DNA from: Ostrea edulis
Taxonomy: Eukaryota
Assembly (NCBI RefSeq): GCF_947568905.1
Contig: NC_079172.1
Span: 65,410,001 to 65,474,000, forward strand
Reading direction: 5' to 3'
DNA length: 64,000 nt
Part shown: piece by piece, positions 9,850 to 63,134 of the stretch
How the letters are laid out: each line of letters starts with the position of its first letter
Numbering within the stretch: position 1 is the stretch's first letter
Made by a program: the position numbers and the translations under genes
The notes under the pieces: model-generated
The model's database searches: none
Told to the model about the DNA's origin: nothing
The model's input: the letters and a program-made list of their open reading frames with translations, nothing else

Positions 9850-9966
9850 AGACTTATGTTGAGTCCACTCGTTAGCGTCAAATTCAAGTTTGCCTCCGAC
9901 ATCTGTTGTAATCTGGTCCTCACTGATGTAATCCAACATCTCGCTGGGCTCATTACACAACACAAC
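9850..9966 (-). CDS. MCF2L: DBS/MCF2L-like GEF coding exon 6 (VVLCNEPSEMLDYISEDQITTDVGGKLEFDANEWTQHKS)
   Basis: CCTTTGTAG acceptor, TCT|GTACGT donor, 117 nt. L..YI...Q.T.D.GG.L....W end of the SEC14 domain. Confidence 0.9.
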
Positions 9967-11505
9967 CTACAAAGGCAATATAAAGTTAATATCAAACATC
10001 TCACTGGGCTCATTACAAAACACTACCTACAAAGGCAATATAAAGTTAATATCAAACATCTCACTGGGCTCATTACAAAACACAACCTACAATGGCAATA
10101 TAAAGTTAATATCAAACATCTCGCTGGGCTCATTACATAACACTACCTACAAAGGCAATATAAAGTTAATATCAAACATCTCACTGGGCTCATTACATAA
10201 CACAACCTACAAAGGCAATATAAAGTTAATATCAAACATCTCGCTAGGCTCATTACAAAACATTACCTACAAAGGCAATATAAAGTTAATATCAAACATC
10301 TCACTGGGCTCATTACATAACACTTCCTACAAAGGCAATATAAAGTTAATATCAAACATCTCACTGGGCTCATTACATAACACTACCTACAAAGGCAATA
10401 TAAAGTTAATATCAAACATCCCACTGGGCTCATTACATAACATTACCTACAAAGGCAATATAAAGTTAATATCAAACATCTCACTGGGCTCATTACATAA
10501 GACAACCTACAAAGGCAATATAAAGTTAATATCAAACATCTCACTGGGCTCATTACATAACATTACCTACAAAGGCAATATAAAGTTAATATCAAACATC
10601 TCGCTGGGCTCATTACATAACACAACCTACAAAGGCAATATAAAGTTAATATCAAACATCTCACTGGGCTCATTACATAACATTACCTACAAAGGCAATA
10701 TAAAGTTAATATCAAACATCTCGCTGGGCTCATTACATAACACTACCTACAAAGGCAATATAAAGTTAATATCAAACATCTCACTGGGCTCATTACAAAA
10801 CACTACCTACAAAGGCAATATAAATTTAATATCAAACATCTCACTGGGCTCATTACAAAACACTACCTACAAAGGCAATATAAATTTAATATCAAACATC
10901 TCGCTGGGCTCATTACAAAACACTACCTACAAAGGCAATATAAAGTTAATATCAAACATCTCACTGGGCTCATTACATAAGACAACCTACAAAGGCAATA
11001 TAAAGTTAATATCAAACATCTCGCTGGGCTCATTACATAACATTACCTACAAAGGCAATATAAAGTTAATATCAAACATCTCACTGGGCTCATTTCATAA
11101 CACTACCTACAAAGGCAATATAAAGTTAATATCAAACATCTCACTGGGCTCATTACATAACACTACCTACAAAGGCAATATAAAGTTAATATCAAACATC
11201 TCACTGGGCTCATTACATAACACTACCTACAAAGGCAATATAAAGTTAATATCAAACATCTCACTGGGCTCATTACATAACACTACCTACAAAAGCAATA
11301 TAAAGTTAGTATCAAACATCTTGCTGGGCTCATTACAAAACACTACCTACAAAGGCAATATAAAGTTAATATCAAACATCTCGCTGGGCTCATTACATAA
11401 CATTACCTACAAAGGCAATATAAAGTTAATATCAAACATCTCACTGGGCTCATTACAAAACACTACCTACAAAGGCAATATAAAGTTAATATCAAACATC
11501 TCGCT
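9935..11505. repeat. 60-bp tandem array (26 copies) spanning the DBS exon 6 acceptor
   Basis: Unit AACATCTCGCTGGGCTCATTACACAACACAACCTACAAAGGCAATATAAAGTTAATATCA; exact 60-bp register. Confidence 0.97.
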
Positions 11506-12032
11506 AATTATCATTACATGACTGGCATAACATAACACTACCTTACAAAGGCAACATGATTTATTTCAAATATCTCGCTGGGCTCATTATCTAATCTAAT
11601 ATTACCTAGATGGGCAATATAAAGTTATATCAAACATTTTACTAGATTTGTAACTTTAGAGTGATTATTATCTTTATATCATTGAGCTTGTTACACGAAA
11701 TTACTGATAAATGGTAAATTAAAATCAGTTTACCGCACTCATTACATAACAATGCTTGAATTGGTAAAAAAAAAGTTTACTAATTTCCAAGTTAAGAAAG
11801 AAATTATCCATTAATATGATGTATTTGATTACTTTATGTACCAACTTAAAATATACTGAATTGCTCAAATCCTTTCCCCATGAATAAAAGTAGAAAGCAA
11901 ACCCAACATTCTTACAAACCTATATTAACATTGATGTTTTACACATATAAGAGAAGATTAAATATCTTTATATCCTTTCAAAATAATGCAATATAATGAT
12001 ATGTTAAAAAGGCCTTTAGCCCTGCACCTCAC

Positions 12033-12146
12033 CTTGAATTCTAATTCTTCTTTCACAAACTTGGATTTCATATCAGCAAAAGCTCTTTGGAAGAATCCCT
12101 TTGGTTGAAGTAGGAATACAACTTGTATATGGTTTGGGAAAAACTC
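12033..12146 (-). CDS. MCF2L: DBS/MCF2L-like GEF coding exon 5 (EFFPNHIQVVFLLQPKGFFQRAFADMKSKFVKEELEFK)
   Basis: TTCTTGGCAG acceptor, AAG|GTGAGG donor, 114 nt phase 0/0. FP....V..L.P.GFFQR motif. Confidence 0.92.
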
Positions 12147-12149
12147 CTG

Positions 12150-12321
12150 CCAAGAAACAATATAGACTATCAGTATTTAGAACCTACAGAAACAATATAG
12201 ACTGTCAGTATTTATTACACTCTACAGAAACAATATTGACTGTCAGTATTACACTCTACAGAAACAATATTGACTGTCAGTATTTATTACACTCTACAGA
12301 AACAATATTGACTGTCAGTAT

Positions 12322-12355
<34 letters not shown>

Positions 12356-13040
12356 TGTTTTGTTTGACCCGAGAAGCCTTCGGCTTCGGGCAACAGATCG
12401 GTTCTTGGGTCAAACAAAACAGTGTTGTCCGAGGACACCGTCCATAACTGTTTTGTTATACATCTTCGTTTTCTAAAGGTTGTTTTTACGAGATGCACAT
12501 GGTTTGTTGACTTCGAACTTTTAACAAGACAGTGTAATTTAACTGCGTAGTACGTTTATCAATGAATCCACTAATTAAAAGAAAACACACCCAATATCCG
12601 AATTAATAATCAATCATTACATTTTTCGTATTCCTGTTTAGTGTTTCATCTAATAAATTCTGTATTTCATCATCAGTTAAATCACTCAACCTCGCCATTG
12701 CATAAGCAAAGCAGCAGATCGATAATCACGTGACTTGCGTAGCCAATGGACAGAAGGCAGACTATTGCCCGGTCATTAGTTCGTAAACTGTTGACCGGTC
12801 AATAGATATGAGTGTGAGAATTGGTTTAACAGTTAAAATGTTAGTTCTAAATCGTATTAGTTTTATATAGGAAAGAAAATGAAGGTGTATAACAATACAC
12901 TCTACAGAAACAATGTTGACCGTCAGTATTTAGATTCTACAGAAACAATGGTTTTTAGATGTTACATAAACAATAGTATTTAGATTCTACAAAAACTGTC
13001 AGTATTTTTTACACTCTACAGAAACAATACTATCAGTGTT
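12150..13040. repeat. 35-39-bp array abutting the DBS exon 5 acceptor, split by the hairpin element
   Basis: Unit CTACAGAAACAATATTGACTGTCAGTATT(TATTA)CACT at 12150-12320 and degenerate at 12895-13040. Confidence 0.85.
12321..12892. mobile_element. Non-autonomous DNA element with long terminal hairpin (superfamily uncertain)
   Basis: About 50-bp arms at 12325-12374 and 12403-12451 are near-perfect inverted repeats. Termini TTATACA...TGTATAA. Interrupts a 35-39-bp array that resumes at about 12895. Confidence 0.65.
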
Positions 13041-13299
13041 CACAGTTTACATTTGTACACAACATCTTTGTTTTCTCGGCTGATTTTGATTGAGTAGACT
13101 TTAACAGTAGGAAATAGATGAATTTAGTAGTTCCTTCTCTTTTTGTCAAAAGGGATCATTCTTATTAATCTCTTACAAATGACAAAACTTTCAGTAAAAT
13201 ACAAATTACAAATAGATATTGATGTGAACAGTTGAAGAGGACAAATAATTCAGGCAAGGAAATCCCAGTAGACAATATAATTTTCAAATTTCCAGCCGT

Positions 13300-13640
13300 A
13301 CTGACCAGTATCAGTGGCTAAGTGGTTAGAGAATTTGCTAAGTGACCGGGAGGTCATGAGTTCAAGCCCCATGCATCAAATTTAAGATGTAAACATCGGT
13401 AGTGACTGCTCCTATGCTAAACATCTGGCATTTAGAAGTGAGAAATGCGGGTCTTTTGGACAAGATCTTCAAAACCGAGGTCCCGTGTTGCGGCAGACAT
13501 TGGCACGTTAAAGAACCCTCACTGCTTCGGCCGTAAGCGCCATGCATAGGTCAAAATTGGGACACTTCACCTACAGCTGGCAACATCTTAATACAAGTGA
13601 AAAATTCTCAAAGGAACATCAAAACAAAAAAAGAAACAAA
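13300..13640 (+). mobile_element. tRNA-derived SINE with Meta-type core
   Basis: A-box-like GTGGCTAAGTGG and B-box-like GAGTTCAAGCCC; core AAACCGAGGTCCCGTGT...TGGCACGTTAAAGAACCCTC; (A)nC tail. Confidence 0.8.
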
Positions 13641-13649
13641 GGTACTGAC

Positions 13650-13740
13650 CGACATTTTGAGTAAGAGTGCCCTGACATCATTCCAGCTTGCCTGTCTTCT
13701 GTCTAATATAATCACAAACCCCTGTTCAGATTCCACCACC
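13650..13740 (-). CDS. MCF2L: DBS/MCF2L-like GEF coding exon 4 (VVESEQGFVIILDRRQASWNDVRALLLKMS)
   Basis: TTGTTGCAG acceptor, CG|GTCAGT donor. GF..I.DRR...W..V motif of DBS/Trio SEC14. Confidence 0.9.
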
Positions 13741-14141
13741 CTGCAACAAAAACATGCTATATTTCAAAAGAAAACTGCCTCCTCCTCCCCCCACCCCTGC
13801 CAAAAGAAATAATTCTAAGGGGAAAAAAATCACCCTTTAACACCATGACTGGGTTACACAATTACTCTATTTAACACTATTTTCATAGATCACAACATTA
13901 TTGTAATAGATCACAACGTTCAAACAGATCACAATGATGAATCAAAGAGACAGTGAAGCATTATTTCTTGCTTTTCTTCATTAGATTGAGACATTGACAC
14001 AAGAGACTCGGGATGGACAACATCAGTCGCTAATCTCTCAACAGAGAGAGGAATTAACAAACACGGTCCTTACTCACTGAATAATAAACATAGACAGTCT
14101 CGCCCTTTGGCAGGTTTGTATCCATACAAAATGCGACTTAC

Positions 14142-14256
14142 GTTGGTACACAACACAGGAAGTTGACGAGCTTTCGGTACTCTTCGTCGGGTATTTGTGG
14201 GTGTTGGGGGTTTTCTGGAAATGTGAGGATCAAGGCGCCATTCTTTGCTTTTCCAC
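14142..14256 (-). CDS. MCF2L: DBS/MCF2L-like GEF coding exon 3 (GKAKNGALILTFPENPQHPQIPDEEYRKLVNFLCCVPT)
   Basis: TTCCTACAG acceptor, AC|GTAAGT donor, phases 1/2 fit neighbours. GG...G..I.TFP motif of the Trio/DBS SEC14 domain. Confidence 0.9.
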
Positions 14257-14610
14257 CTGTAGGAAAGTGGTCATGTTAATCATGCAGACACAGTTACATA
14301 GTCATCAATCAGAGGGGGGGGGGGGGGGGAGGGGGTGTAGGAAAGTCATGTTAATCAGACACAGTCACATTCATCAAACTGAGGGGTGGTTGTGGAGAAG
14401 TCTCAAATCATAACACCGTAACACAAGCAAAGTACTGCTTAACGCTAACTCCAGCATTGTTTTACCTAGGTCAGCAGGAAGCAATGGAGAAGTACATCTA
14501 AGTGTTAACAAGTTATGTACACTCTTACATATCAGTTAGACTGCTACTTCTGACATTTATCTGTCATCAATGCATTTACGATTGTATAAAAGAGCTACAT
14601 CTTACATGCA

Positions 14611-14760
14611 CCTGTGATAAATGCGTATCATGATTGTATACCTGTGATAAATGCGTATCATGATTGTATACCTGTGATAAATGCGTATCATGATTGTATG
14701 CCTGTGATAAATGCGTATCGTGATTGTATACCTGTGATAAATGCGTATCGTGATTGTATC
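14611..14760. repeat. 30-bp array (5 copies) spanning the DBS exon 2 donor
   Basis: Unit CCTGTGATAAATGCGTATC(A/G)TGATTGTAT(A/G). Confidence 0.95.
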
Positions 14761-14818
14761 AGAGAAGCCACATCCAGGACACTGTATGGACATTCTTGCT
14801 CTTCCATTAAGTCGCTAT
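14732..14818 (-). CDS. MCF2L: DBS/MCF2L-like GEF coding exon 2 (DSDLMEEQECPYSVLDVASLIQSRYAFITG)
   Basis: TTTACAG acceptor, CAG|GTATAC donor. Matches the start of the SEC14/CRAL-TRIO domain of DBS-type proteins (..D..L..R.AF..GG). Confidence 0.85.
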
Positions 14819-15105
14819 CTGTAAATAAACAAAACAGTGTCACAAGAAAATGAAAGGAACATATCAGACAAGAACTTCCATATTGTAAATCAAATTTCAG
14901 TTGCTACAGTAATTCACAATTTAAATGGTTGATAGGCAGTCAACAAACCAAATAACATCGAATGGATATACAATTGTTGTTTCCCTTTGTTAAACTTATT
15001 CTGTGAGATGTTAAAACTATTTACGTATAGTCAGGTGGTGAGAACAAATGATTAACATGTTGTTTATATACTACACAGCAAAATATCATCTGATGCAAAT
15101 AAGTT

Positions 15106-16292
15106 CATGAGTTTTCAAGGTTAAAGATCTCATCATGAGTTTTCAAGGTTAAAGATCTCATTGTGAGTTTTCAAGGTTAAAGATCTCATCATGAGTTTTC
15201 AAAGTTAAAGATCTCATCATGAGTTTTCAAGGTTAAAGATCTCATCATGAGTTTTCAAGGTTAAAGATCTCATTGTGAGTTTTCAAGGTTAAAGATCTCA
15301 TCATGAGTTTTGAAGGTTAAAGATCTCATCATGAGTTTGGAAAGTTAAAGATCTCATCATGAGTTTTCAAGGTTAAAGTTCTGATTGTGAGTTTTCAAGG
15401 TTAAATATATCATCATGAGTTTTGAAGGTTAAAGATCTCATCATGAGTTTGGAAAGTTAAAGATCTCATCATGCGTTTTCAAGGTTAAAGTTCTGATTGT
15501 GAGTTTTTAAGGTTAAAGTTCTGATTGTGAGTTTTTAAGGTTAAATATATCATCATGAGTTTTGAAGGTTAAAGATCTCATCATGAGTTTTTAAAGTTAA
15601 AGATATCATTGTGAGTTTTCAAAGTTAAAGATCTCATCATGAGTTTTCAAGGTTACATGTAGATGTCATCATGAGTTTTCAAGATTAAATATCTCATCAT
15701 GAGTTTTCAAGGTTAAAGATCTCATCATGAGTTTTGAAGGTTAAAGATCTCATTGTGAGTTTTTCAAGGTTAAAGATCTCATCATGAGTTTTGAAGGTTA
15801 AAGATCTCATCACAGGGCTCGAAATTAACATATGCCCGTCAGTCTGTGACTGGTTGAAAGTCTGGCGGACTGACTGACATTTGTTTTAGTCAGTCCAATG
15901 GGACTGGTTAATTTTCTAAAGCATCATTTTGGAAAATATATTTATGAAATCTTATACACACATTTGGCATGCTTCGATCTGTAGATATCAAACGAATTTG
16001 ATTCGTAAATATAAATCCCACATAAGTGTTACAATATTGTCTGAAGCATATTGAGTTAAATTTCATTTTAATAACATTAACGAAATCTGCTTAATTATTT
16101 CTGGAAAACTGTTGGACTGGTAAATTTTTCTGCGGACAGGTTGAAATTATACCTCATCAATCCGGCTGGACTGGTGACATGAAAAGTTAGCTTCAAGCCC
16201 AATGCATCATGAGTTTTCAAGGTTAAAGATCTCATCATGAGTTTTCAAGGTTAAAGATCTCATCATGAGTTTTCAAGATTAAAGATCTCATG
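15106..16292. repeat. 28-bp minisatellite (about 28 copies) interrupted by a MITE
   Basis: Unit CATGAGTTTTCAAGGTTAAAGATCTCAT. Confidence 0.95.
15813..16204. mobile_element. CAG-terminal MITE inserted in the 28-bp array
   Basis: Left CAGGGCTCGAAATTAAC, right GTTAGCTTCAAGCCC(AA)TG. Flanking CATCA duplicated (15808-15812, 16205-16209). Confidence 0.65.
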
Positions 16293-16299
16293 AAATCGG

Positions 16300-16490
16300 T
16301 ACAAATTCAGTTTATTTGAATCAGTCGTAGTAAATGAAATCAATACAAACTCAGTTTATTTGAATCAGTCGTAGTAAATGAAATCAAATACAAATTCAGA
16401 TTAATTGTATCAGTTGTAATAAATTGAATCAGTACACACTCAGTTTAATTGTATCAGTCATAATAAATGAAATCAGTACAAATTCAGATT
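16300..16490. repeat. Degenerate 41-45-bp repeat, about 4 copies
   Basis: TACAAA(T/C)TCAGTTTATTTGAATCAGTCGTAGTAAATGAAATC. Confidence 0.75.
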
Positions 16491-18504
16491 ATCTGGAAAA
16501 ACCTGATACGGACCCAAACAGATGGTCGGGCAGGATAAATTTTTGCAATCACAGTTATCTAACTTTACTCTATAAAAGTAATTTGTCAATTAATTCCCCG
16601 ACCAAATCAACTGTGTGTGTGGCACAACTTAATTGTAGCATTATAATAAAACGGGCGACTTTAAAAGCTGTATGTTCTGATGTTTCTGCAAATTTTGTCG
16701 ATAAAAATGCAGTTAACTTGTTACATTTATGTATTTACAAGGACATCCGACATGCCTATATATCATTACAATGTTCAGTTTTAGCCAGAACTTAATTTTG
16801 TTAACAAACATTGACTATCAAATGTACTTGTCCCTCAGCCATCCCCCAGTGTAATGCATAGTCAAGATTTAATTAGTCACATGATCATTTCACAAATATC
16901 AACAAATATAGGAAATGAAGTAAGAACATTTTGAAGCATTTGAGACTGCAAAAATTTGTGCAAAATGGTTTATTTGGTGATTAATCCGTGAACTAACTCA
17001 ATGGACAACTGCATTTTCTCTCTTTGATTCCATGTTACTTACATTGAAGTCATGCGTATGAGTAAGAGTTAATTCCCAACATCAACAAGCATATTCATGG
17101 TGTTAATTAAAACACTATATAATATTTATCGTTATAATCTTTCCACCATTTTCTTTTAATACAAATGTTTTGCAGTATATAATTTAGAAAAAGTCAATAA
17201 CATTATAAACCAATGCAGCTATATTAAAATAATTTTTGATGCTTTGGAAGAAAATTACAGGTCACACAACTTTGATTGTGACATCATAATCATGCAACAA
17301 GATTCGAGATACATTCTGAATTTCAAATCATCGTATAAAAGATGACGGATATAATTTCTTAAAAAATATCTTCTTTGAAATGTAAAATACATAAAATTCT
17401 AAGTAAATCTGATCACCCAGCACATCAGCTTGATGTGCCCTTCAGACATTATACTAGATCTTGAATCACCACGTGACATTGTTTATGAAATAAGATATCA
17501 TCTCCATTACTTCATTGGGATATAAAATGCACTTCGTAATGTGATCAAATCTTAAAGTAAATTATACTAGATATAGGATTTGATCATCATGTGACCATCT
17601 GCATCCACATCCCAATGAAATTATTGAAATGACATCTAAATATAACAAACTTCACTGCCCAACTTTTGAGTAAACCTACCGGTAATTAACCTCTCCCTCC
17701 CTGACTTCCCCACCCCCATTTCTTTTCCAATTTCTTTATTTGTCGTGGAGAAACAGAAAAGAGTAATGAAACCTGGCCCTTCAAGATGTAACAACAGTGT
17801 TTATAAAAGAGAGAGGCATTATAGATACCCAAGATAAATAAAAAAAACGCAGCCCAAATATATATAAATAATCCCGACCCCAACTCTATATTATGAATGT
17901 CTCAGTTCAGACACACAGCAAGCTCAATCCGACAGCATTACAATATACATGCATTATTATGTCAACATTAGCTAATAATTGACACTTTTCTGAAGCTGGA
18001 CTGGATAGTATTGATTCAGATGAAAAACCCAACATCTGACTCATGTTTTAGGATACATACTATGATAGACAAAACCTTTGCTATTTTTCTGCAGCCCCAG
18101 CCACAGAATCCCATCAGAATCGCATGATTTCGAATGACCGTAATAAACGATCAATCTCGTCACCAGTGCCACACTGGGAAATGAGATTCTAGGCTTCTTC
18201 TGTCTTTAAATGATTCTGTCAACTTCTACTTAATTCATGGGAGAAGTGGGAGATGTTTCAATTAAAGATTATAAATCAATTAAATGAATGGTAATCAACT
18301 AAAAAAAGATTATCTCATCCTTAGACAGAGATACAAATGTGGCTTTACATTGACACACATCAATAAATGCTTACCCGGACATTGTGCACTGAATTTGATG
18401 ATGAAATATTTAGCTTAAATGATTAAAAACCAACATCATTCACAAACCATCTTCAGTAAAAGTGATTGCGTCGAGAAATATTCATGCATGCAATTTGGTT
18501 GAAC

Positions 18505-18662
18505 CACAGGTATCTGAATTTTAATCAATAAATAGATATGAATAGAAAAAAAACCACTTTATCTATACATAACTACATAGTGTATTTATATATATATATA
18601 ATAGATATATTTTTTTCTATTTATATCTATAATAAATACTGATTAAAATTCAGATACCTGTG
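18505..18662. mobile_element. Foldback MITE, CAC...GTG termini, 7-bp TSD (P/Galileo-like), copy 1
   Basis: TIR CACAGGTATCTGAATTTTAATCA; flanks GTTGAAC/ATTGAAC. Same family as 45131-45273. Confidence 0.75.
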
Positions 18663-20679
18663 ATTGAACCAACAATGCATTTTTAAAGAACAACTGTGGT
18701 TCGAAACAAAAACAAATATTTGTGAAAAAGATGAGGTGTTTACAAATCTCATTCATTTTTCTTTCCTGTAGATAAAATGTGGTCTACAGTAACTGTAGTG
18801 AAACTAGATATTATCATTTTAATCCACTGACGTTACTACCTTGTATTTCTTACGGAAATCCAAATATTGATGAAAACTTTACTCCGGAGAATCACCTTCA
18901 ATCATGCATTCAATAAATAATTCAATCAGATAATTTCCTCAAAGCATTAGATTAAGCCCATCACACACACACACAGACAGTCAAGAAAATCCCCTGAAAA
19001 TTTCACAAGATGCTACATACTTCTCATATTGCAGACATTTCTATTAAAATGAGAACTACATCTGAATACAAGTTACCTGTATTGCATACCTGTAATTAGC
19101 TTCCTACCTGGACAAGTAAGTGGATACACATAAAATCCAGTCAGCTAGTTCCTTCTTGTCACGATTATCATTAAATGCCTCTACATGTAGCTTCCTTGTT
19201 TTTATAGGCCATTTTAGAATTCAAAATCTTAGTCCAGGAAAATCCATCTCACTTAATAATCTAGCTTAAACATCCATTTGATAAAAATGCAGGCACACAC
19301 ACAGGTATGTGTAGATTACAGATACCCCACAGCAAAATAAAAACATGTACTACAATGTCCATCAGATATATATCTGATAAAAAAGTCCCACCCTAAGCAA
19401 AACAAACAACAACAACAACGAAAACGAGCCAGTGTAACTCCATACCTAAAAGCTAACATATACTTAAAAGCACCTGCGGACAAAGAATTTAGTCCATAGA
19501 TAGAAAAAGTCTAAGCTGTCATCGTTAACTTATCCTGAGTTAATCATCATTAACCTATACTGAGTCAAAACACTACACAGGGTCGGTGACAATGACTGGG
19601 ATGTGTACAGGTATTAATCAATGGCAATCATTAGTTATTGCAGTTGTCCGTGCAGGTGCTTGATGGTCATTTCTACAGGTCGCGACGGCAGTACATGGAT
19701 TTACAAAGTCACACATTACTAACATGCATCAAGCATTCTGCTATCTGGGTCAAAAACTTTGACAGGGATCAGATATGCAAGATAGAATCAATATTGTATT
19801 GTACATGTATGTTAATTCCACAGTTTTTACCACACTAAATACGAATTTAATCGATTCCTAGTGCACTCTTGTCATTTTCTCAATCCACTGTGATGTCATA
19901 ATTCTAACTAGTAAATAATTACATTCTGAAGTATTTGATACTCACCCTAGTGCTGGAACACGTGTACTTTAACAAAACACACCTGAGAGACGGCTCCATC
20001 ACCACTGTATCTCAGTCAGTCCGCTATTTTTAGTATCTTACTTGGACCAGATCATTAAGCAATAATTTACCTATTGATCAATGATTTCATTCATGGAATT
20101 CCCATATTGTATACATATTTGATTTGTCTTATCTCTCATATCAGACCCTGGCTTTTCCAATCACGAAGATCCATGGCAACTCATGTCTCATCCGTGTTTA
20201 CATATGTATACCTCTAAGACTGGGGCCAAACCTGACAATAACTACATGCATCCTTGTACAAAAGAAACAGACATTAAATTTTAATTTTTTTTCTGTTTGA
20301 AGATGAATTTTCGACATGACAGCTTATCAGTGCTTGTCAGTAATGAGAACAAAACACGAGGGTCAGTGGTTACAGTAATTTGTTAACATCATTTCAGGGG
20401 GAAACAAGATCAGAGAATTCGAATTATGTTTGCTAAATTCTCATCACAAATTTTGAGAATCTACCTCTGATGATTTAATAATTTGTTAATTGTTACCTGA
20501 TGAGCATTTTGTAAAGCTACTAGTTAGAACGATTAATCAATACATGTGAATGGGAATCATTCTTCAAATAAAACTTAAAGAAAATTACTTTTCAAAATAT
20601 GAGTACTTCCTTTTCTTCTGTTGTGCAGTAACACTTTGATACTATCAGTATAACAGGCAGCAAGCTGGGTAAAAGTAAT

Positions 20680-23955: not shown

Positions 23956-24379
23956 CTTTCTCTGTCACCTTCTGCTCCTCAGCGTTCTGAGTTTGAGCGT
24001 TGAGTTCTTTAATCCTATCCTCTTTTGAGATTTCCTCATCACAGTCCGGCCCCCACTCAGACTCGCTCGTCGTGTTGCTATACTGGTGGCGATGACCTTT
24101 CACAAATGTCGAAGGGGGCAGAAAATAAGATCTGTCCGGACTCTCGTCCGTGCACTCGTCAGTGGAGCACTGAGATGAGCTATAACCTGCAGGGGGGAGC
24201 CCGAGGGTCTCGCGCATATCCGTACCTGCTGGCAGATCCAAGGTAGAACTCTTCCGTCGGAAGTTCTCCAGGAATTCGTCAATATCATGTTCCACTTTTG
24301 ATACCTGGATTCCTCCTGTTTTCTTCGATCTGGGCGAGTTTGATTTGGTGGTATGTACACCCCTTCTTCCTGTTGCCAT
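23956..24379 (-). CDS. MCF2L: DBS/MCF2L-like Rho GEF (SEC14 + spectrin repeats), coding exon 1 (Ser/acidic N-terminal extension)
   Basis: ATG in ACCATGG context at 24379 with an in-frame TAA just upstream. 141 open codons, then donor AG|GTAAC (phase 1), which joins exon 2 in frame (G+AT=Asp). Candidate acceptor TTCCTGTTAG ends at 24396. No homology recognised in this exon; supported by phase and splice signals. Confidence 0.65.
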
Positions 24380-50316: not shown

Positions 50317-51585
50317 CACTTCCTATTGATCCCAACCCCTCCTATTGATCCCACCCCTCCTATTGATCCCACCCCTCCTATTGATCCCATCCCTCCTATT
50401 GATTCCCCTCACTCTTATTGATCCCACCCCTCCTATTGATCCCACCCCTCCTATTCATCCCACCCCTCCTATTCATCCCACCCCTCCTATTGATCCCACC
50501 CCTCCTATTCATCCCACCCTTCCTATTCATCCCACCTCTCCTATTCATCCCACCCTCCTATTGATCCCACCTCTCCTATTGATCCCACCCCTCCTATTGA
50601 TCCCACCCTTCTTATTGATCCCACATCTCCTATTGATCCCACCCCTCCTATTCATTCCACCACTTCCTATTGATTCCACTCCCTCCTATTGACCCCATCC
50701 CTCTTATTGATCCCACCTCTCCTATTGATCCCACCTTCCTATTCATTCCACCCCTCCTATTCATCCCACCCTTCCTACTGATCCCACCTCTCCTATTGAT
50801 CCCACCCCTTCCATTGATCACCTCTCCTTCTATTGTTCCCTCACTCCTATTGATCCCACCTCTCCTATTGATCCCACCCCTCCTATTGATCCCACCCCTC
50901 CTATTGATCCCATCCATCCTATTCATCCCATCCCTTCTATTGATCCTCCTTCCTTCTATTGTTCCCCTCACTCCTATTGATCCCACCTCTCCTATTGACC
51001 CCACCCCTCCTATTGATCCCACCCCTCCTATTCATCCCACCCTTCCTACTGATCCCACCTCTCCTATTCATCCCACGTGCAACATGTGGCCTTGCGTTGT
51101 CTTGCTGCAGAGTGATGTGATTTTGCTGTCTCTGTATGAAGGGTATCACATGGCGCTGAATAATTTCGTCTCAATAGCGTACGCAGGTGAGATGTCCATT
51201 GACAATTTGTAGAGGGGTCCTTCCACGTGCTGTTATTCCACCCCACACCATAACGTTACCTCCACCGAATTGTCGACGTTGCACAACATAAGTGTCCTGG
51301 TACCGCTTCCCAATGCGACGATACGCTCTACAACCTCGTCACTGCTACCCAAATGAAATCTGGATTCATCAGTGAACAAAATATTGGCCCAGTCCTGTAT
51401 TCTGAATCGCAGACGTCGCCTGCACCACGCTAGTCTAGCGATACGGTGACGTTGAAGCAGTATTGGGCGCACCGCTGAACGCCCTCCTATTGATCCAACC
51501 CTTCCTATTGATCCCACTCCTCCTATTGATCCCACCCTTCCTACTGATCCCACCTCTCCTATTGATCCCACCCCTCCTATTCATC
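50317..51585. repeat. 17-18-bp C-rich minisatellite flanking the Tc1 fragment
   Basis: Unit CCCACCCCTCCTATTGAT at 50317-51075 and 51481-51585. Confidence 0.93.
51075..51480 (-). mobile_element. Internal Tc1-like transposase fragment (frameshifted)
   Basis: Minus-strand peptides RHRIARLAWCRR..DWANILFTDESRF and IPFIQRQQNHITLQQDNARPHVAR (first two acidic motifs of DD34E). No TIRs. Confidence 0.85.
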
Positions 51586-51810: not shown

Positions 51811-53319
51811 TCATGTACAAGTTTTTAAAGAAATAACACAAAAACAGGTCAACCGACAAAGGGGTACATATACAATGTGTACCTCTGGGCATGCAATCTC
51901 CGTGCAGAGTTGTCGTTCGTTACTCGTGATAGTGATGGGGATGTTGGAAGACACGGTCTCCAGAGACTACGTAGATATTGTCAATGAGGAACTCCGTCAT
52001 CTTTTATCATTAACAACTTCAAAGTGATTGTGCGTAGAATTAGTTTGGCTTTTAAAGAATATCTCCGAGTTACATTTTTTTAAATAGAATTAAGCAGCTG
52101 TCTATGATGTCTTTATAATTTATCGTGAGGACTTGTGGTGTAAAAAGTGTTGAAAAGTCGTATGTTTTGAAGCTGATGATTTTGGGAAAGTTTGGTGATT
52201 TCAAATTTATTAAAAGTTCTTTGGAAATTTTGAGAATTCACATTTGATATACACTACTCTTTCGTGAGGAGTAAAGATTGGGTCTTGGTAGAACATTGAC
52301 TGGATCCTGCAATGTATCTTTGTAAGAGTTTGTGTGAAGGTCTGGACTCCAGTATACAGTAACTCATATTCATCCGTCCCATTGACAAGGATATTGTGTT
52401 TACAACTGGAAGGTGATTTTCAAGAATGTCGTCATTAGAAGGGGAACTAGAGTATAAATTAAATTACCAAATGTTGAAATGTGAAATTAAAGCCGAGTTC
52501 CTTTTTATGAGCCTTACAAATAAAAACAATGTCGTTACAAGCTTTGCCAGCAGGATCCAGTAAATCTTCCTCACGTAATCTATTTAATTTTTTCATCACT
52601 TCCAGTTTTTACTGAACACAGAAAATCAGATGGTACACATTTTGTTTTTACGTGTCTAATGGGAGATCTTGATGTTCCTCTTTTTTATCTTCTGACAAAG
52701 TTTCAAGGTCCCACTCGTTACCTAATCGTCTGGCTTCGCTGGAATTCGTAAACGAGATGAAAGTTTGTCGACCAGAGTCGTCCGATTTTCGGATTTTTTA
52801 AAATGAGTGATTTTAGGTCGTCAATTTCAACTATATATACAAGACCAGTAATGATATACATATGTACACTATATAGTTGAAAGAAAAGAAACATGTTGAG
52901 GGATTTTGTATAAGATTGTCTATCCTTAGGCAGTGTAAAGTTTGCATGTAATTAAAATGTTTGGATGCAATAGCAGAAGTTTATTTGTAGGAAATACAGG
53001 GTGTAGACTTGATGAAATACAAGACAGACATCTATTCCTTTTGATGGAAATTTTCAGTTAAAAAAACCGACTATGTGATTCGGAATTATATTCTTCCGAT
53101 GGTCTGAGTAATGTCCATAAAACTACATAATTCTGTGTTCCGGTGTTGAAAAGTCCATACACGGACTTACTTTGACTTATTTAGATGCTGAACACGTTCA
53201 AAGGAAACACGTAGAGTTTCGACCAAAAATTTATGACGTGAAGTAAATATATGCCTCCGCACACGCCTTTGTGCATATTGGGGAAAATCTACAGAACGCG
53301 ATGGGGAAATTTTAAGGAT

Positions 53320-56300
53320 CCTTGCCGCAGGACATGCGAGACGCCATAATTGTAATCTTGTACAAGAAAAAGGGTGACAGAGGCGACTGTAACAACTACA
53401 GGGGCACCTCCCTTCTGAGCACCGTTGGCAAACTAACGCTCAATAGTGGATATGGTCTTCTCCACCCGCCAACTACAGGAAAATCTTCTCCCTCCACCAA
53501 CTACACGAAACGCGCAGAGAGAGCCGCAGAAAACCCTCTGTACAGTCGTCATTGACCTCACCAAAGCGTTTGACTTGGTCAGTCAGTTGGGAAGGACTCT
53601 TCAGCACCCCCCTGAAAACTGGATGCCCCCCCCCCCCCCCCCCCCCCACACACATCTATGACGATATGAAAGCGACTCTCCAGCACGAGGGTAGTATGTC
53701 GGATCCATTTGACGTCAAACAAGGCTGCATCATGGTGCCCTCCCTCTTTGGCATCTTCTTTCTCTCTGCTGTTGAAGCATGCTTTTGGAACGTCCAGCGA
53801 GGGAGTGCACCAGAACGGATGGACGATTCTTTAGTCTCGCCAGACTGAGAGCAAAGACCAAGGTGCACGAACCCCTCGTCAGGGACATGTTCTGATGACG
53901 CTGCTGTCACTTCACACACTGAACAGTAACTCCAGAGTCTCATGGACAGGTTTTCACAAGTCTGTAAAGACGTTGGGCTCACTATTAGCCAGCAAAAAAC
54001 CAATGTGATGTGCCAAAATATGGAGAGTACCCTGGTCATCATCATCGACAACTACGAACTGGACGTTGTCCACCAGTTTATGTACCTTGGTTCTGCCAAC
54101 AACGTCCATCTGTTCCTCGACGTTAAGATCAGTCAGCGCATCGGGAAGGCTGCAACAATGCTAGGTCGACTCACGTCTCGTGTGACTGTGTGGGAAAGTC
54201 CCAAACTGACAGCAGCTATCACGATGTCAGTGTACCAGACCTGCATCATCAGTACACCACTGTACGGCAGCATCAGTACACTATTGTATGGCAGCATCAG
54301 TACACTATTATATGGCATCATCAGTACACTATTGTATGGCAGTCAGTACATCACTGTACGGCATCATAAGTACGCCACTGTACGGCATCATCAGTACACT
54401 ATTGTATGGCATCATCACTACACTATTGTATGACATCATCAGTACACTATTGTATGACAGCATCAGTACACTATTGTATGACAGCATCAGTACACTATTG
54501 TATGACAGCATCAGTACACTATTGTATGGTAGCATCAGTACACTATTGTATGACAGCATCAGTACACTATTGTACGGCAACATCAGTACACTATTGTACG
54601 GCATCATCAGTACACTATTGTATGACATCATCAGTACACTATTGTATGACAGCATCAGTACACTATTGTATGACAGCATCAGTACACTATTGTATGACAG
54701 CATCAGTACACTATTGTATGGTAGCATCAGTACACTATTGTATGACAGCATCAGTACACTATTGTACGGCAACATCAGTACACTATTGTACGGCATCATC
54801 AGTACACTATTGTATGACATCATCAGTACACTATTGTATGACATCATCAGTACACTATTGTATGGCAGCATCAGTACACTACTGTACGACATCATCAGTA
54901 CACTATTGTATGACAGCATCAGTACACTATTGTATGACAGCATCAGTACACTATTGTACGACATCATCAGTACACTATTGTATGACATCATCAGTACACT
55001 ATTGTATGACAGCATCAGTACACTATTGTATGACATCATCAGTACACTATTGTATGACATCATCAGTACACTATTGTATGACATCATCAGTACACTACTG
55101 TATGGCAGCATCAGTACACTACTGTACGACATCATCAGTACACTATTGTATGACATCATCAGTACACTATTGTATGGCAGCATCAGTACACTACTGTACG
55201 ACATCATCAGTACACTATTGTATGACATCATCAGTACACTATTGTATGACAGCATCAGTACACTATTGTACGACAGCATCAGTACACTATTGTATGGTAG
55301 CATCAGTACACTATTGTACAGCAGCATCAGTACACTATTGTATGACATCATCAGTACACTATTGTATGACATCATCAGTACACTATTGTATGACATCATC
55401 AGTACACTACTGTACGGTAGCATCAGTACACCACTGTACGGCATCATCAGTACACTATTGTATGGCATCATCAGTACACTATTGTATGACATCATCAGTA
55501 CACTATTGTACGGCAGCATCAGTACACCACTGTACGACATCATCAGTACACTATTGTATGACATCATCAGTACACTACTGTACGGTAGCATCAGTACACC
55601 ACTGTACGGCATCATCAGTACACTATTGTATGGCATCATCAGTACACTATTGTATGGCAGCATCAGTACACCACTGTACGACATCATCAGTACACTATTG
55701 TATGACATCATCAGTACACTATTGTACGGCAGCATCAGTACACTATTGTATGACATCATCAGTTCACTATTGTATAGCAGCATCAGTACACCACTGTACG
55801 ACATCATCAGTACACTATTGTATGACATCATCAGTACACTACTGTACGGTAGCATCAGTACACCACTGTACGGCATCATCAGTACACTATTGTATGACAT
55901 CATCAGTACACTATTGTATGGCATCATCAGTACACTATTGTATGACATCATCAGTACACTATTGTATGACATCACCAGTACACTATTGTATGACATCACC
56001 AGTACACTATTGTATGACATCATCAGTACACCACTGTACGACAGCATCAATACACCACTGTACGACAGCATCAGTACACTATTGTATGACATCATCAGTA
56101 CACTATTGTATGGCATCATCAGTACACTATTGTATGACATCATCAGTACACTATTGTATGACATCACCAGTACACTATTGTATGACATCACCAGTACACT
56201 ATTGTATGACATCATCAGTACACTATTGTATGACATCACCAGTACACTATTGTATGACATCACCAGCACACTATTGTATGGCATCATCAGTACACTATTG

Positions 56301-56410
56301 TATGACATCATCAGTACACCACTGTACGCTGAGAATCCTGGACAACATATAGTGACACTTCTCAGAATGATTTTTATTGGGTTATGTTTACATTTCCAAT
56401 GTCTTACCGT
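53320..56410 (+). mobile_element. RTE (BovB-like) LINE relic with an internal 24-bp satellite expansion
   Basis: PQDMRDAIIVILYKKKGDRGDCNNYRGTSLLS, DLTKAFD, VKQGC, DDAA, LTISQQKTNVM, FMYLGS, RIGKAA...LYG motifs across frameshifts and stops. Confidence 0.9.
54244..56328. repeat. 24-bp satellite, about 85 copies, derived from RTE coding sequence
   Basis: Unit ATCAGTACACTATTGTATGACATC (ISTLLYD/GI/S). Confidence 0.97.
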
Positions 56411-59190: not shown

Positions 59191-59629
59191 GTAAGGCTGA
59201 TTACGGTTACAAGAGTAGTCAAGTTAAAGATTATCAGGCAACTGAAAAACAAAACTAAAAGGAATCTGATTCTTTTGGATGCTTTAATGAATAACACTTC
59301 CTCCATGGAATATATTAAATTTGTTTCAGCATATAAATGCATATTTACGCTTCCTCTCCCAAAACATTCAAGTTTCTAAATAAGGATCTTGCAACACACA
59401 GTAATGAACTAGCAACGATCTCGTAACGATTATTCACATTGATTTCAAATGTTTTAGTGGAGAATTAGATAGATCAAAACCAACTCTGCTAATTTCTCGT
59501 GTTGAAACTCGGAAATGAATTTCCTATTTTAGTTCTCTTGTTGTTTGTAAAACTGTAAGTAATGGCATTCTGTACAGTAATATTGTATGTGTGTAATGCA
59601 ACAGTCTTGTTTATTCCATTGATTTCCAG

Positions 59630-59735
59630 ACCCGAAAATGACTCTGACAGCGACTTTGAGGAGCCGATGTCAGTATCTAGTGGTGGTGTTGGTGGGGGAA
59701 GAGGAAGAAAAAGGGGGTCAGGCAGAGGTGGCAGT
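59630..59735 (+). CDS. STAG1: STAG coding exon 2 (PENDSDSDFEEPMSVSSGGVGGGRGRKRGSGRGGS)
   Basis: ATTTCCAG acceptor, AGT|GTAAGT donor. Acidic then basic/Gly tract typical of SA N-termini. Confidence 0.7.
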
Positions 59736-59851
59736 GTAAGTACAAAAGGGTCATAATGTAAGTACAAAAAGGTCACAATCAACAGTCTTGACATTTATTG
59801 CTTTCCTGAAGTCAAAAATTTAGTTAAACAAGGAGTGGAAAATTAAACAAC

Positions 59852-60585: not shown

Positions 60586-61027
60586 AACAACTAAGACCAT
60601 AGTTGTTTGGTTTTTTTTACCCCTCTGAAAAGGATTCTTCTACCTAAGGAGAAGATGGTCAAGAGTTCAGTGGTCAAACTACTCTGGACATAGGAAGGAT
60701 ATGTCTCTTCAATATCTTGTGAACCTTTTTCTGGATAGACTTCAAACTTCGTATATTGGTTCCTGCTAAGTAGGAGATAACACCTATTGATTTTGAGTGA
60801 CAAGGTCATTAATTAAACTACTCCGAGCGTAAGAAATTATTTTCTGGAAAATCATTTGCTTAATAGACATCAAACTTGGTGTATTGGTATCCCCAAGTTT
60901 TTACTATCATTATCAACATTCTAAATATAAAACTAATCCTTTTCAATATTGTTACATGTAAATTTTTATGTGTAGGCATTTATTTCATTCAACTGTACTT
61001 ACAGTGCTATGATTAAATACTTTAAAG

Positions 61028-61153
61028 GCTGTGAAGCGACCCAGACAGACCGGGAACGTGGGGAGAAGCAGAAAAAAGAGTGGCGGGGAGGAGGAGGACT
61101 CGGGGACAGGCTCAGTGTTTGACATTGTGAAGAGTGGAAAAGCATCGCTACAG
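61028..61153 (+). CDS. STAG1: STAG coding exon 3 (AVKRPRQ...GSVFDIVKSGKASLQ)
   Basis: TTTAAAG acceptor, CAG|GTGGGT donor. F..VK.GK..LQ motif preceding V.DWIESYK. Confidence 0.85.
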
Positions 61154-61570
61154 GTGGGTCTCTAAGGTCGTTGTTTGAAATTGCTTAAGGGGGAAAGGCT
61201 AGAAATAAGTCGTTGAAGTTGCTGAGTGACATCATTAATGGCAGAAATGTTTGTATTTTAGAAGGCCCCGGGGAAGAATAGTACCATGTACATGTACTAA
61301 TCGGTCTACCTTCTCTAAGTAAAGCATTATTATTATTATTGTAAATTGGTTGTTACAGATTAATTGCTGAATGACATCATTAATGGCAGAAAATTTATGC
61401 TTAAGGTGGATCACTAAGGTTCATTAAACATCGTTAAGAGCGGAAAAACGTCACATGTTTAGAGTTGTTCTTGACATTGTTGACAGTTTAAGAAGAAACA
61501 ATTTGTTAATACTTGGATTTCTTGGATAATGAATTGAAATGAATGCAGCGGTTATATCCTGGTTTTGTAG

Positions 61571-61744
61571 GTGACCGTGGATGAGTGGATAGAGTCATAC
61601 AAAAACGATCGAGACACGGCTTTAGTGGAGCTGATACAGTTCTTTATCCAGGCCTCGGGCTGTAAAGGAACCATAACTCCGTTCATGTATGCCAACCAGG
61701 AGCACGCCGAGATCATCCGTAAAATGACAGAGGAATTTGATGAG
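61571..61744 (+). CDS. STAG1: STAG coding exon 4 ([33 protein letters not shown]...[12 protein letters not shown])
   Basis: Near identity to the vertebrate STAG1/2 N-terminal domain; TTTTGTAG acceptor, GAG|GT donor. Confidence 0.95.
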
Positions 61745-62069
61745 GTTTTCATTTCACAATTATTGTAGCATTGAGTCACTCTAGTTCTTTCTAATCCATT
61801 GTGAATCTTTGTTCAACTCCACCTGTTTTTAATTTTTTTTTGCCAGCTACCTTATCTAAAATTTATTGCTTGATAGATTTTAAAAGTAAACTGTGTTGAA
61901 ATAAGATTTACAACTTATAACAGTAAACTTGTTTCAAATCTTTGTTTCTTGTGACTGAAGTAGATTTGTTACTTAGATATTTTTGTATTAGTGCTCTGAA
62001 CACTAGATATTGGTATATCTGAACTAATTATGAGGTCTAATCGATGAATATTGTATAATTTACCTTTAG

Positions 62070-62274
62070 GACAGTGGTGACTATCCTCTCATTATGTCGG
62101 GCCCAAACTGGAAGCGTTTCCGTGTCAATTTCTGCGAGTTTGTGCAGGTGCTTGTACGACAGTGTCAGTACAGCATTATCTACGACCAGTACATGATGGA
62201 CAACATCATCTCTCTACTGACCGGTCTGACGGACTCGCAGGTCCGAGCTTTCCGACACACCAGTACTCTGGCAG
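62070..62274 (+). CDS. STAG1: STAG coding exon 5 ([24 protein letters not shown]...[13 protein letters not shown])
   Basis: STAG domain signature [14 protein letters not shown]; CTTTAG acceptor, CAG|GTAGGA donor. Confidence 0.97.
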
Positions 62275-62576
62275 GTAGGAACGGTCCATTCTTATTAGAG
62301 CTAAGTCTGTATTCAGTCTTGATTGTCATTCTCTGGCAGGTTGGATCGGTCCATTCTTATAAGAGCTAAGTCTGTATGATTATTCTGCTTTCTATAAAAC
62401 TCTGGGTGATCAGGAGACTTCAGAACACTTCAGAAAGATTGTCAGTAATTTATATATGGTGTAATGTTTTTGTTGTGGTATACTTTGTGATGATTTAGTT
62501 GTAACACACTTTATGATGATTTATCTGTAGTGCATTTTATGATATTAGCTATAATACATTTTGTGATATTTTTTAG

Positions 62577-62728
62577 CTATGAAGTTAATGACAGCCTTGG
62601 TAGATGTAGCTTTGAATCTCAGTATAAACTTAGACAACACACAGAGGCAGTACGAAGCTGAGAGACAGAAACAACAGCCAAAGAGGGCCAATGATCGCCT
62701 GGAGATGTTGTTACAGCGTAGACAGGAG
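62577..62728 (+). CDS. STAG1: STAG coding exon 6 ([32 protein letters not shown]...[11 protein letters not shown])
   Basis: [14 protein letters not shown]...[11 protein letters not shown] motif; TTTTAG acceptor, GAG|GTAAGT donor. Confidence 0.97.
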
Positions 62729-63134
62729 GTAAGTGGAACAGCCAAAGAGGGTCAATGATCGCCTGGAGATGTTGTTACAGCGTAGGCAGGAGATAAGTGG
62801 AACAGTCATTGATCTCCAGAAAACTGACATGAGTCAGGAAAAAGAAGAGAAAAATAAGGAATTTATTGAACAAAATCTTCCAAATGTTATAATTTACTTT
62901 TAATGATTTTTCCCAATTTGAGGGAAAATGTCGCTATTTTTCCTCAATTCAAAAGGAGGGGTGCTTGTTCAAAAATGAAATCACGGTCTATCCATGTTTC
63001 AATACTGACTGATACAATGTCATGAAAATAAGTATAGGCTGAAAGGAGTGGGTTTATTTTAAAACAGCATTAAACTGAAGAAAATTCCTATTGTCTTTTC
63101 TCGCTAATAAGTCTTATGATTTGTTTTGTTTTAG

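What the first reader, a model, noticed from the sequence alone, without database searches (positions are those of the whole stretch)
9935..62810. Splice-junction echoes: exon boundaries tandemly amplified into introns in all four genes
Seen in sequence: at least 11 of roughly 50 junctions in the window carry a tandem copy of the junction or splice signal on the intron side. DBS-like gene: exon 2 donor (30 bp x5), exon 3 acceptor (x2), exon 5 acceptor (35-39 bp x4+), exon 6 acceptor (60 bp x26). TCTEX1D2: exon 2 donor (58/60 bp x9), exon 3 acceptor (x2). ELC: exon 2 acceptor (38 bp x6). STAG: three donors and one acceptor (x2 each). The exon-proximal copy is the one compatible with the ORF. 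Decoys either lost the dinucleotide (AG>AC, AG>AT, GT>AT) or give a stop or frameshift; one weak GC decoy is the exception. Inference: this could be a genome-wide mutational process focused at junctions (e.g. co-transcriptional slippage or R-loop repair), filtered by selection, together with unusually positional splice-site choice or heavy reliance on NMD. It could also be raw material for intron gain by tandem duplication. I know of no named system for this but cannot search the literature. The window has many unrelated minisatellites, so enrichment must be tested formally.
Basis: partly seen in the sequence, partly recalled or inferred. Interest (0 to 1): 0.9.

Follow-up and report, generated by a model that had tools for sequence, protein, structure and literature searches.

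The report
Splice-junction minisatellites in oyster genes
In four neighbouring oyster genes about a quarter of the exon-intron borders have been copied head-to-tail into the intron; this is the structure named 'mirage' minisatellites in amphioxus, and here it is about four to six times commoner than random placement predicts and differs between related oysters.

Summary
All 11 junction echoes are at the stated places. Gene models that use the exon-proximal copy give open reading frames collinear with homologues (46 homology-supported junctions).

Eight arrays contain exon sequence. Three end at the splice signal. One more starts 5 nt after a donor.

With each array collapsed to one unit, uniform seeding predicts 2.2 junction-spanning arrays out of 23; 8 are seen (P about 9e-4). 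It predicts 2.6 within 7 nt; 11 are seen (P about 2e-5). Against intergenic array density, P is 1e-4 to 1e-6.

The units are strictly local, not transposon-borne. Orthologous loci in other oysters carry arrays at the same junction with a different unit, at another junction, or none, so turnover is fast. Scallop and ark-clam ELC genes have none.

Amphioxus 'mirages' and the human F7 IVS7 VNTR have the same structure. A junction-focused mutational process remains possible but unproven, and no RNA data were available.

The scan noted this pattern in at least 10 other windows of this genome. One was followed up, with the same conclusion.

The parts
14610..14759 (-). DBS-like exon 2 donor array: 30-bp unit (28 nt exon + GT) x5. 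The exon-proximal copy is the working donor (exon 14732-14818).
   Evidence: TRF; sequence; decoy table; homologue collinearity; spliced ORF
14257..14386 (-). DBS-like exon 3 acceptor duplication x2 (about 55-60 nt, intron only). The distal copy reads AC instead of AG (exon 14142-14256).
   Evidence: sequence; local alignment score 60 vs null max 28
12147..12323 (-). DBS-like exon 5 acceptor array: 38-bp unit (tactgac + pyrimidine tract + ctgtag) x4.7, abutting exon 12033-12146. Further copies of the same family lie at about 12900-13030, beyond a roughly 570-bp unique stretch.
   Evidence: TRF; sequence; blastn of unit
9931..11505 (-). DBS-like exon 6 acceptor array: 60-bp unit (24 nt intron + 36 nt exon) x26. 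All 25 decoys keep AG, and each would add an in-frame TAG (exon 9850-9966).
   Evidence: TRF; sequence
32898..33413 (+). TCTEX1D2 exon 2 donor array: 58/60-bp unit (32 nt exon + 26-28 nt intron) x9. All 8 decoys keep GT (exon 32796-32929).
   Evidence: TRF; sequence; PDB alignment
34775..34884 (+). TCTEX1D2 exon 3 acceptor duplication: 61 bp x2 (about 17 nt intron + 32 nt exon). The decoy reads AT instead of AG (exon 34853-34922).
   Evidence: sequence; alignment score 68 vs null max 30; detector
35374..36391 (+). 37-bp x27 array starting 5 nt after the TCTEX1D2 exon 4 donor (exon 35305-35368). It is next to the junction but does not span it. Derivation from the exon end is not shown (P=0.07).
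   Evidence: TRF; sequence
43371..43591 (+). Myosin ELC exon 2 acceptor array: 38-bp unit (about 13-15 nt intron + 23-25 nt exon) x6. Older copies reach back to about 43208 (exon 43567-43713).
   Evidence: TRF; sequence; PDB alignment
59735..59779 (+). STAG exon A donor duplication: 22 bp x2 (1 nt exon + first 21 nt of the intron). The decoy keeps GTAAGT (exon 59630-59735).
   Evidence: TRF; sequence
62266..62377 (+). STAG exon D donor duplication: 65 bp x2 (9 nt exon + intron). The decoy keeps GT and would shift the frame (exon 62070-62274).
   Evidence: sequence; alignment score 79 vs null max 30; detector; PDB
62482..62576 (+). STAG exon E acceptor array: 26-bp unit x3.6 ending at the acceptor (exon 62577-62728).
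   Evidence: TRF; sequence; PDB
62673..62805 (+). STAG exon E donor duplication: 64 bp x2.1 (56 nt exon + 8 nt intron). The decoy has GT>AT, and a 5-nt AACAG repeat sits at the unit borders.
   Evidence: TRF; sequence; PDB

Best explanation
These are 'mirage'-type minisatellites.

How they arise: a short local tandem duplication (22-65 bp) happened to straddle or touch an exon-intron border. The copy next to the exon stays the working splice site. The other copies lie inside the intron as decoys.

How they change: some duplications then grew to 5-26 copies by slippage or unequal exchange, and they are gained, remodelled and lost quickly between oyster lineages.

Why they are tolerated (inferred): the spliceosome keeps using the exon-proximal site, and use of almost any decoy would add a premature stop or a frameshift. 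The one exception is the in-frame GC decoy of DBS e2.

What is shown: the structure, the local origin from conserved exon sequence, the reading-frame logic, the excess at junctions in this sample, and the differences between species.

What is inferred: which sites are used in RNA, the role of NMD, and the cause of the excess. For the cause I lean to a mutational bias, plus slower loss because a deletion reaching past the exon side is lethal.
For: Structure and coordinates.

The exon part of each unit encodes residues conserved in homologues, so the exon is the source and the array is the derivative.

Units have no copies elsewhere in the window.

Excess at junctions:
- 8 of 23 intronic arrays span a junction against 2.24 expected (P=9e-4).
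- 11 lie within 7 nt against 2.62 expected (P=2e-5).
- Against intergenic array density, 1.4 are expected and 8 seen (P=1e-4); 1.65 expected and 11 seen (P=1e-6).

Independent locus: in Saccostrea echinata the two largest arrays in TCTEX1D2 and ELC both span junctions (2 of 7 arrays, 0.32 expected, P=0.034).

Turnover between oysters:
- The TCTEX1D2 e2 donor array has a 42-bp unit in S. echinata and a 58/60-bp unit here.
- The ELC e2 acceptor array has a 74-bp unit in contig L003 and a 38-bp unit here.
- ELC e4 donor arrays occur only in L001 and L002.
- None of the four STAG duplications occurs in L007-L009.

The working copy of DBS e6 differs from all 25 decoys at two fixed sites. It is therefore left out of array homogenisation, as reported for amphioxus mirages (PMC3087553).

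The annotated S. echinata ELC protein P0043 equals the splice through the exon-proximal donor of its mirage.

Precedents for undisturbed splicing: RT-PCR on amphioxus mirages (PMC3087553, PMC3902484) and F7 minigenes (PMC1557585).
Against: No RNA evidence for this species could be obtained, so use of the exon-proximal sites is inferred from reading frames and homology.

The expected number of junction hits depends on the intron length available when the arrays were born. If the ancestral introns averaged about 300 nt or less instead of the roughly 800 nt used (about 540 nt in the 19-intron run), the excess would shrink to about 1.5-fold or vanish.

The window was flagged because it shows the pattern.

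For acceptors, a first-come rule would favour the upstream decoys, so tolerance of 25 intact decoy acceptors is not explained by the F7 donor model.
Confidence: 0.8

Rival explanations
1. Chance overlap. Minisatellites are born uniformly along non-coding DNA in a genome very rich in them. With short ancestral introns, many simply fall on a border, so there is no junction preference at all.
For: 24% of the window lies in TRF arrays. With TRF arrays alone in 19 introns, strict spanning is only marginal: 5 seen against 2.0 expected, P=0.03. The expectation rises steeply if ancestral introns were short. Related oysters L007-L009 show no junction arrays at 12 STAG junctions.
Against: 11 of 23 arrays lie within 7 nt of a border against 2.6 expected (P=2e-5). 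Array density away from junctions inside introns equals the intergenic density of about 0.8 per kb, so the whole genic excess sits at the borders. The two largest arrays in the S. echinata genes both span junctions. At least 10 other windows of the genome carry the same note.
Confidence: 0.15
2. Junctions are true mutational hot spots for tandem duplication. Possible causes are transcription- or splicing-coupled breakage, or replication slippage favoured by local sequence. The arrays would then be the visible product of that process.
For: The excess at junctions. The same junction carries arrays with different units in different oysters: TCTEX1D2 e2 donor and ELC e2 acceptor. The 64-bp STAG duplication is flanked by a 5-nt AACAG repeat. 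The TCTEX1D2 exon 2 end contains a GATATCA direct repeat.
Against: No direct evidence for any mechanism. Arrays at one junction in two species may share ancestry instead of recurring independently. Asymmetric loss could give up to about a two-fold excess without any hot spot. Close relatives lack the STAG duplications altogether.
Confidence: 0.3
3. The arrays are kept because they do something. Candidates are extra U1 or U2AF binding sites that strengthen exon recognition, stepwise (recursive) removal of a long intron through AG|GTA decoys, or backup splice sites.
For: All 25 decoy acceptors of DBS e6, all 8 decoy donors of TCTEX1D2 e2 and all 5 in-array ELC decoys keep intact signals. 20 of the 25 DBS decoys read AG|GTA, which could regenerate a donor after splicing, whereas the real exon starts GTT.
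Against: Arrays are absent, or have a different unit, at orthologous junctions in related oysters, which argues against a conserved role. High identity between copies fits youth or homogenisation as well as it fits selection. First decoys of low-copy duplications tend to lose the dinucleotide, which looks like disarming, not use.
Confidence: 0.1
4. Artefact: either the repeats are mis-assembled, or the exon boundaries were placed wrongly so that they happen to fall on repeats.
For: Arrays of 0.5-1.6 kb are hard to assemble and their copy numbers may be wrong. No RNA data were available.
Against: Boundaries were set from homology and reading frame, not from the repeats. The same kind of array appears in independent assemblies of other oysters from NCBI, ENA and Logan.
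Confidence: 0.03

Closest known systems
'Mirage' minisatellites of amphioxus (Adh3, globins BflGb6/BflGb9, troponin C, PGBD5; Canestro et al. 2002, as cited in PMC3087553 and PMC3902484)
   Same: Tandem repeats whose unit spans an exon-intron boundary, at both 5' and 3' boundaries. Units are tens of bp and there are 2 to many copies. Most copies keep AG/GT. The boundary unit is left out of array homogenisation. Copy number is unstable. They have been discussed as a route to intron gain.
   Different: The phylum is different (a bivalve mollusc). Here there are 11-12 junctions in four adjacent genes, with a formal test of excess and a comparison across related species. Undisturbed splicing was shown by RT-PCR in amphioxus but is only inferred here. 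I found no report of mirages in molluscs.
Human F7 intron 7 37-bp VNTR (PMC1557585)
   Same: The first repeat spans the exon 7-intron 7 boundary, so the real donor is followed by identical pseudo-donors that stay silent. It offers a model in which the most upstream donor is chosen by 5'-to-3' scanning.
   Different: It is a single human locus and concerns donors only. It does not explain the silent decoy acceptors upstream of the real one, and no claim of genome-wide excess was made.
Intron gain by tandem duplication of an AGGT-containing segment (Rogers model; PMC3265369, PMC4974935, PMC2891723)
   Same: A tandem duplication provides duplicate splice signals.
   Different: In that model the duplication lies inside an exon and creates a new intron. 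Here the intron already exists, no new intron or exon is seen, and all junction positions match those implied by homologues.
Transposon-borne satellite-like arrays of oysters (Helentron-associated repeats; PMC7492417)
   Same: Short dispersed tandem arrays are abundant in oyster genomes.
   Different: Those units occur at many loci and travel with mobile elements. The junction units here occur only at their own junction and contain the gene's own coding sequence.

Membership tests
Mirage minisatellites (amphioxus) | Head-to-tail repeats of minisatellite size (about 10-160 bp units) | tested here: met
   Units of 22-65 bp with 2-26 copies
Mirage minisatellites (amphioxus) | The unit spans an exon-intron boundary (exon part plus intron part with the splice signal) | tested here: met
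   8 arrays contain 1-56 nt of exon and 3 more end at the splice signal. Boundaries were fixed by homology.
Mirage minisatellites (amphioxus) | Both 5' and 3' boundaries can be affected | tested here: met
   5 donors and 6 acceptors
Mirage minisatellites (amphioxus) | Regular splicing is not disturbed | not testable with these tools
   No RNA data. Indirect support only: continuous reading frames, and the annotated S. echinata protein P0043 uses the exon-proximal donor of its array.
Mirage minisatellites (amphioxus) | Length instability or rapid turnover | tested here: met
   Shown between species only: different unit sizes, different junctions, or absence in orthologous loci. Variation within the species was not tested.
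Mirage minisatellites (amphioxus) | The boundary unit is excluded from array homogenisation | tested here: met
   The real DBS e6 copy differs from all 25 decoys at two fixed positions
Intron gain by tandem duplication (Rogers model) | A new intron lies between duplicated AGGT sites inside a former exon | tested here: not met
   Exon peptides align end to end with homologues, with no inserted or missing residues at the junctions
Transposon-borne satellite arrays (Helentron type) | The same unit occurs at many dispersed loci | tested here: not met
   blastn of 8 junction units found hits only at their own array. Only this window was searched.
Recursive splice sites (ratchet points) | An intronic AG|GTAAGT-like site that is used as an acceptor and regenerates a donor | tested here: inconclusive
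   20 of 25 DBS e6 decoys read AG|GTA(G/A)TG. Their use cannot be tested without RNA.

The most novel reading that the evidence does not exclude
Exon-intron borders are real mutational hot spots for tandem duplication in oysters, and perhaps in other very polymorphic broadcast spawners such as amphioxus. Junction-derived arrays would then be a main driver of intron growth: at least 18% of the intron DNA of these four genes is made of them. They would also be a standing supply of duplicate splice sites.
Probability: 0.3. Interest if true: 0.8.

Novelty: new member of a known kind. Interest (0 to 1): 0.6.

Why it matters
Dozens of decoy splice sites whose surroundings match the real site almost exactly sit beside it: 25 acceptors in one intron and 8 donors in another. 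This is a natural experiment on how the spliceosome chooses by position. Acceptors are the more interesting case, because the known donor-scanning model does not apply to them.

If the excess at junctions holds genome-wide, it would turn an amphioxus curiosity known from a handful of genes into a measurable process shared by two distant, highly polymorphic marine lineages. That would bear on how introns grow and how splice sites turn over.

There is also a practical point. These arrays can mislead gene predictors and short-read assemblies of oyster genomes.

Tried and rejected
Leads that did not hold:
1. A possible TCTEX1D2 exon 1 at 32255 (a 5-residue match) was dropped. The real exon 1 is at 27751-27821, found through the S. 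echinata gene.
2. A relic exon copy at the S. echinata ELC e2 acceptor is not significant (P=0.12, similar to the control acceptors).
3. Derivation of the 37-bp array from the TCTEX1D2 e4 donor is weak (P=0.07), and the 78-bp array shows no link to the e4 acceptor (P=0.91). The 61-bp x17 array shares a 21-nt motif with the exon 2 end (P=0.017), which is only suggestive.

Methods that were not used or were fixed:
4. TRF at score 30 gave 161 mostly tiny loci and missed the diverged x2 cases, so it was not used for the test.
5. My first ungapped detector crashed on output, and I rewrote its segment logic.

Data that could not be obtained:
6. Loci for P0001 (gene range too long), P0162 (file too large) and P0114 (not on record).
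7. The original mirage paper (PMC117041) is not held.
8. Downstream DBS-like exons after 7121 were not found in the window, so that gene model stops at exon 9.

Full report
**What is in the window.** The DNA is AT-rich (about 36% G+C). 24% of it lies in 43 TRF arrays. It holds four genes:
- a DBS/MCF2L-like RhoGEF on the minus strand;
- TCTEX1D2 (DYNLT2B), plus strand;
- a myosin essential light chain (ELC), plus strand;
- a cohesin STAG subunit, plus strand.

The ELC has the molluscan FDFWDGRDG motif. It is 92-95% identical to Saccostrea echinata and Magallana gigas proteins, so the genome is an ostreid oyster.

**Gene models.**
- For the DBS-like gene I obtained full-length homologues with one exon as query and mapped them by tblastn. 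Eight exons (14818-7121) join through GT-AG sites into one open frame collinear with P0001 and P0007.
- TCTEX1D2 (5 coding exons), ELC (5) and STAG (7 in the window) were modelled the same way.
- The two first exons were found through S. echinata.
- Single exons match solved structures end to end with consecutive numbering. STAG eD aligns to SA-1 residues 77-144 and eE to 146-195. TCTEX1D2 e2 aligns to DYNLT2B 39-82. ELC e2 aligns to squid ELC 12-57.

This gives 46 homology-supported junctions and 21 complete introns.

**The echoes.**
- Eight units contain exon sequence: DBS e2 donor 28 nt, DBS e6 acceptor 36, TCTEX1D2 e2 donor 32, TCTEX1D2 e3 acceptor 32, ELC e2 acceptor about 25, and STAG donors 1, 9 and 56 nt.
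- Three units end at the acceptor signal: DBS e3, DBS e5 and STAG eE.
- The three diverged x2 cases that TRF missed are far beyond chance, with alignment scores of 60-79 against null maxima of 28-30.
- I add a 37-bp x27 array that starts 5 nt after the TCTEX1D2 e4 donor.

The exon parts encode conserved residues, so the arrays derive from the junctions and not the reverse. The units occur nowhere else in the window, so they are not transposon cargo.

**Decoys.**
- All 25 decoy acceptors before DBS e6 keep the pyrimidine tract and AG. Each would add 60 nt ending in an in-frame TAG.
- All 8 decoy donors after TCTEX1D2 e2 keep GT, and six are identical to the real site over 16 nt.
- All ELC decoys keep AG.
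- Use of any decoy gives a stop or a frameshift. The exception is the first DBS e2 decoy (GC, +30 nt, in frame).
- Among the first decoys of low-copy duplications, the dinucleotide is lost in 3 of 5 (P=0.046), or 4 of 6 if GT>GC is counted (P=0.007). This is a mild hint of disarming.
- The working DBS e6 copy differs from all 25 decoys at two fixed positions. The array therefore grew from an already diverged decoy and does not homogenise with the real site.

**Is it more than chance?** I collapsed each array to one unit and asked how often a unit dropped uniformly into the 21 introns (16,938 nt collapsed) would span or touch a border. The array set was the union of TRF arrays scoring at least 50 and an ungapped tandem detector that found nothing in three block-shuffled windows. 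It holds 23 intronic arrays.

| Criterion | Observed | Expected | P |
|---|---|---|---|
| Spans a junction | 8 | 2.24 | 9e-4 |
| Within 7 nt | 11 | 2.62 | 2e-5 |
| Within 25 nt | 13 | 3.59 | 5e-6 |

Leaving out the two long first introns, or using TRF alone, gives the same picture.

The comparison with intergenic DNA points the same way. Arrays outside the genes number 0.80 per collapsed kb, and so do intronic arrays away from borders. At that density the junction zones should hold 1.4 spanning arrays (8 seen, P=1e-4) or 1.65 within 7 nt (11 seen, P=1e-6).

Two caveats apply. The expectation scales inversely with the intron length that existed when the arrays arose. And this window was chosen because it shows the pattern.

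**Other oysters.**
- The S. echinata locus (L004) keeps the TCTEX1D2-ELC synteny. Its two largest arrays both span junctions: a 42-bp x5.8 array at the TCTEX1D2 e2 donor (the same junction as here, with a different unit) and a 75-bp x3.7 array at the ELC e4 donor (no comparable array here). That is 2 of 7 arrays against 0.32 expected (P=0.034).
- Contig L003 from another oyster has a 74-bp x5.7 array at the ELC e2 acceptor, where this window has a 38-bp unit.
- L002 has a small array starting at the ELC e4 donor.
- Three contigs of a closer relative (L007-L009, exon identity about 88%) have none of the four STAG duplications and no junction array at 12 junctions.
- The ELC genes of a scallop and an ark clam have none.

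The arrays are therefore real in independent assemblies, lineage-specific and short-lived. They recur at some junctions.

**What is known.** Tandem repeats spanning exon-intron boundaries were named 'mirages' in amphioxus (Adh3, globins, troponin C, PGBD5). They occur at both kinds of boundary, leave splicing undisturbed by RT-PCR, are unstable in length, and were proposed as a source of new introns. The globin authors suspected a general cephalochordate phenomenon (PMC3087553 section 16; PMC3902484 section 17). The human F7 intron 7 VNTR is a dissected single case in which the most upstream of several identical donors is chosen (PMC1557585). My searches found no report for molluscs. The oyster literature deals with transposon-borne arrays.

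**Earlier notes of this scan.** First readers described the same pattern in at least ten other windows of this genome. One follow-up (s1-292092) reached the same conclusion for other genes. None of them names mirages.

**Reading.** The structures are mirage minisatellites in a new phylum: tolerated, fast-changing by-products of local tandem duplication. The excess at junctions is supported in this sample and in one independent locus. Its cause is open. A mutational hot spot is possible (about 0.3). Slower loss of border arrays may also contribute, because deletions cannot extend into the exon. A selected role is unlikely given the lack of conservation. Which sites are used in RNA, and the part played by NMD, remain inferences.

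Noticed in passing
window 33605-34669: The 61-bp x17 array in TCTEX1D2 intron 2 shares a 21-nt motif (17 of 21 bases) with the end of exon 2, and its copies read AT where the junction unit has GT. It may be an older, decayed generation of the same junction array (P=0.017). If so, more than 80% of that intron is junction-derived.
   Followed up: partly
window 9931-11505 (minus strand): 20 of the 25 decoy acceptors read AG|GTA(G/A)TG, which could regenerate a donor after splicing to exon 5 (which ends ...AAG). The real exon starts GTT. Stepwise (recursive) removal of the array is conceivable.
   Followed up: partly
window 12324-12900 and 12900-13030: Copies of the exon 5 acceptor unit lie on both sides of a roughly 570-bp unique stretch, as if something had been inserted into the array.
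   Followed up: no
window 23921-24391 (minus strand): A 157-codon ORF starting with ATG (MATGRRG...) lies 9 kb upstream of DBS-like exon 2. It may be that gene's first coding exon or a separate gene.
   Followed up: no
window 1815-3035; 51000-51580; 53300-54430 with 54244-56326: Transposon remains are present: a reverse-transcriptase ORF, a Tc1/mariner-like transposase fragment beside an 18-bp x42 array, and a LINE-like RT fragment that runs into a 24-bp x87 array.
   Followed up: no
window 35098-35282 and 43778-43844: A 78-bp x2.4 array ends 22 nt before the TCTEX1D2 exon 4 acceptor, and a (TC)33 run ends 18 nt before the ELC exon 3 acceptor. Both are near junctions but do not contain the splice signal.
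   Followed up: partly
L004 (Saccostrea echinata) 2421-14889 and 15848-20203: TCTEX1D2 followed by ELC is syntenic with the window. Downstream lie a YqaJ-type exonuclease ORF and a THAP/DDE transposase, which look like mobile-element genes. Only 5% of this locus is in TRF arrays, against 24% of the window.
   Followed up: partly
window 14610-14759 and 9931-11505: Changes in the decoy copies are often CpG to TpG (CGA>TGA in DBS e2 decoys; CAGCGA>CAGTGA in most DBS e6 decoys). This fits deamination of methylated gene-body CpG once a copy is no longer coding.
   Followed up: no
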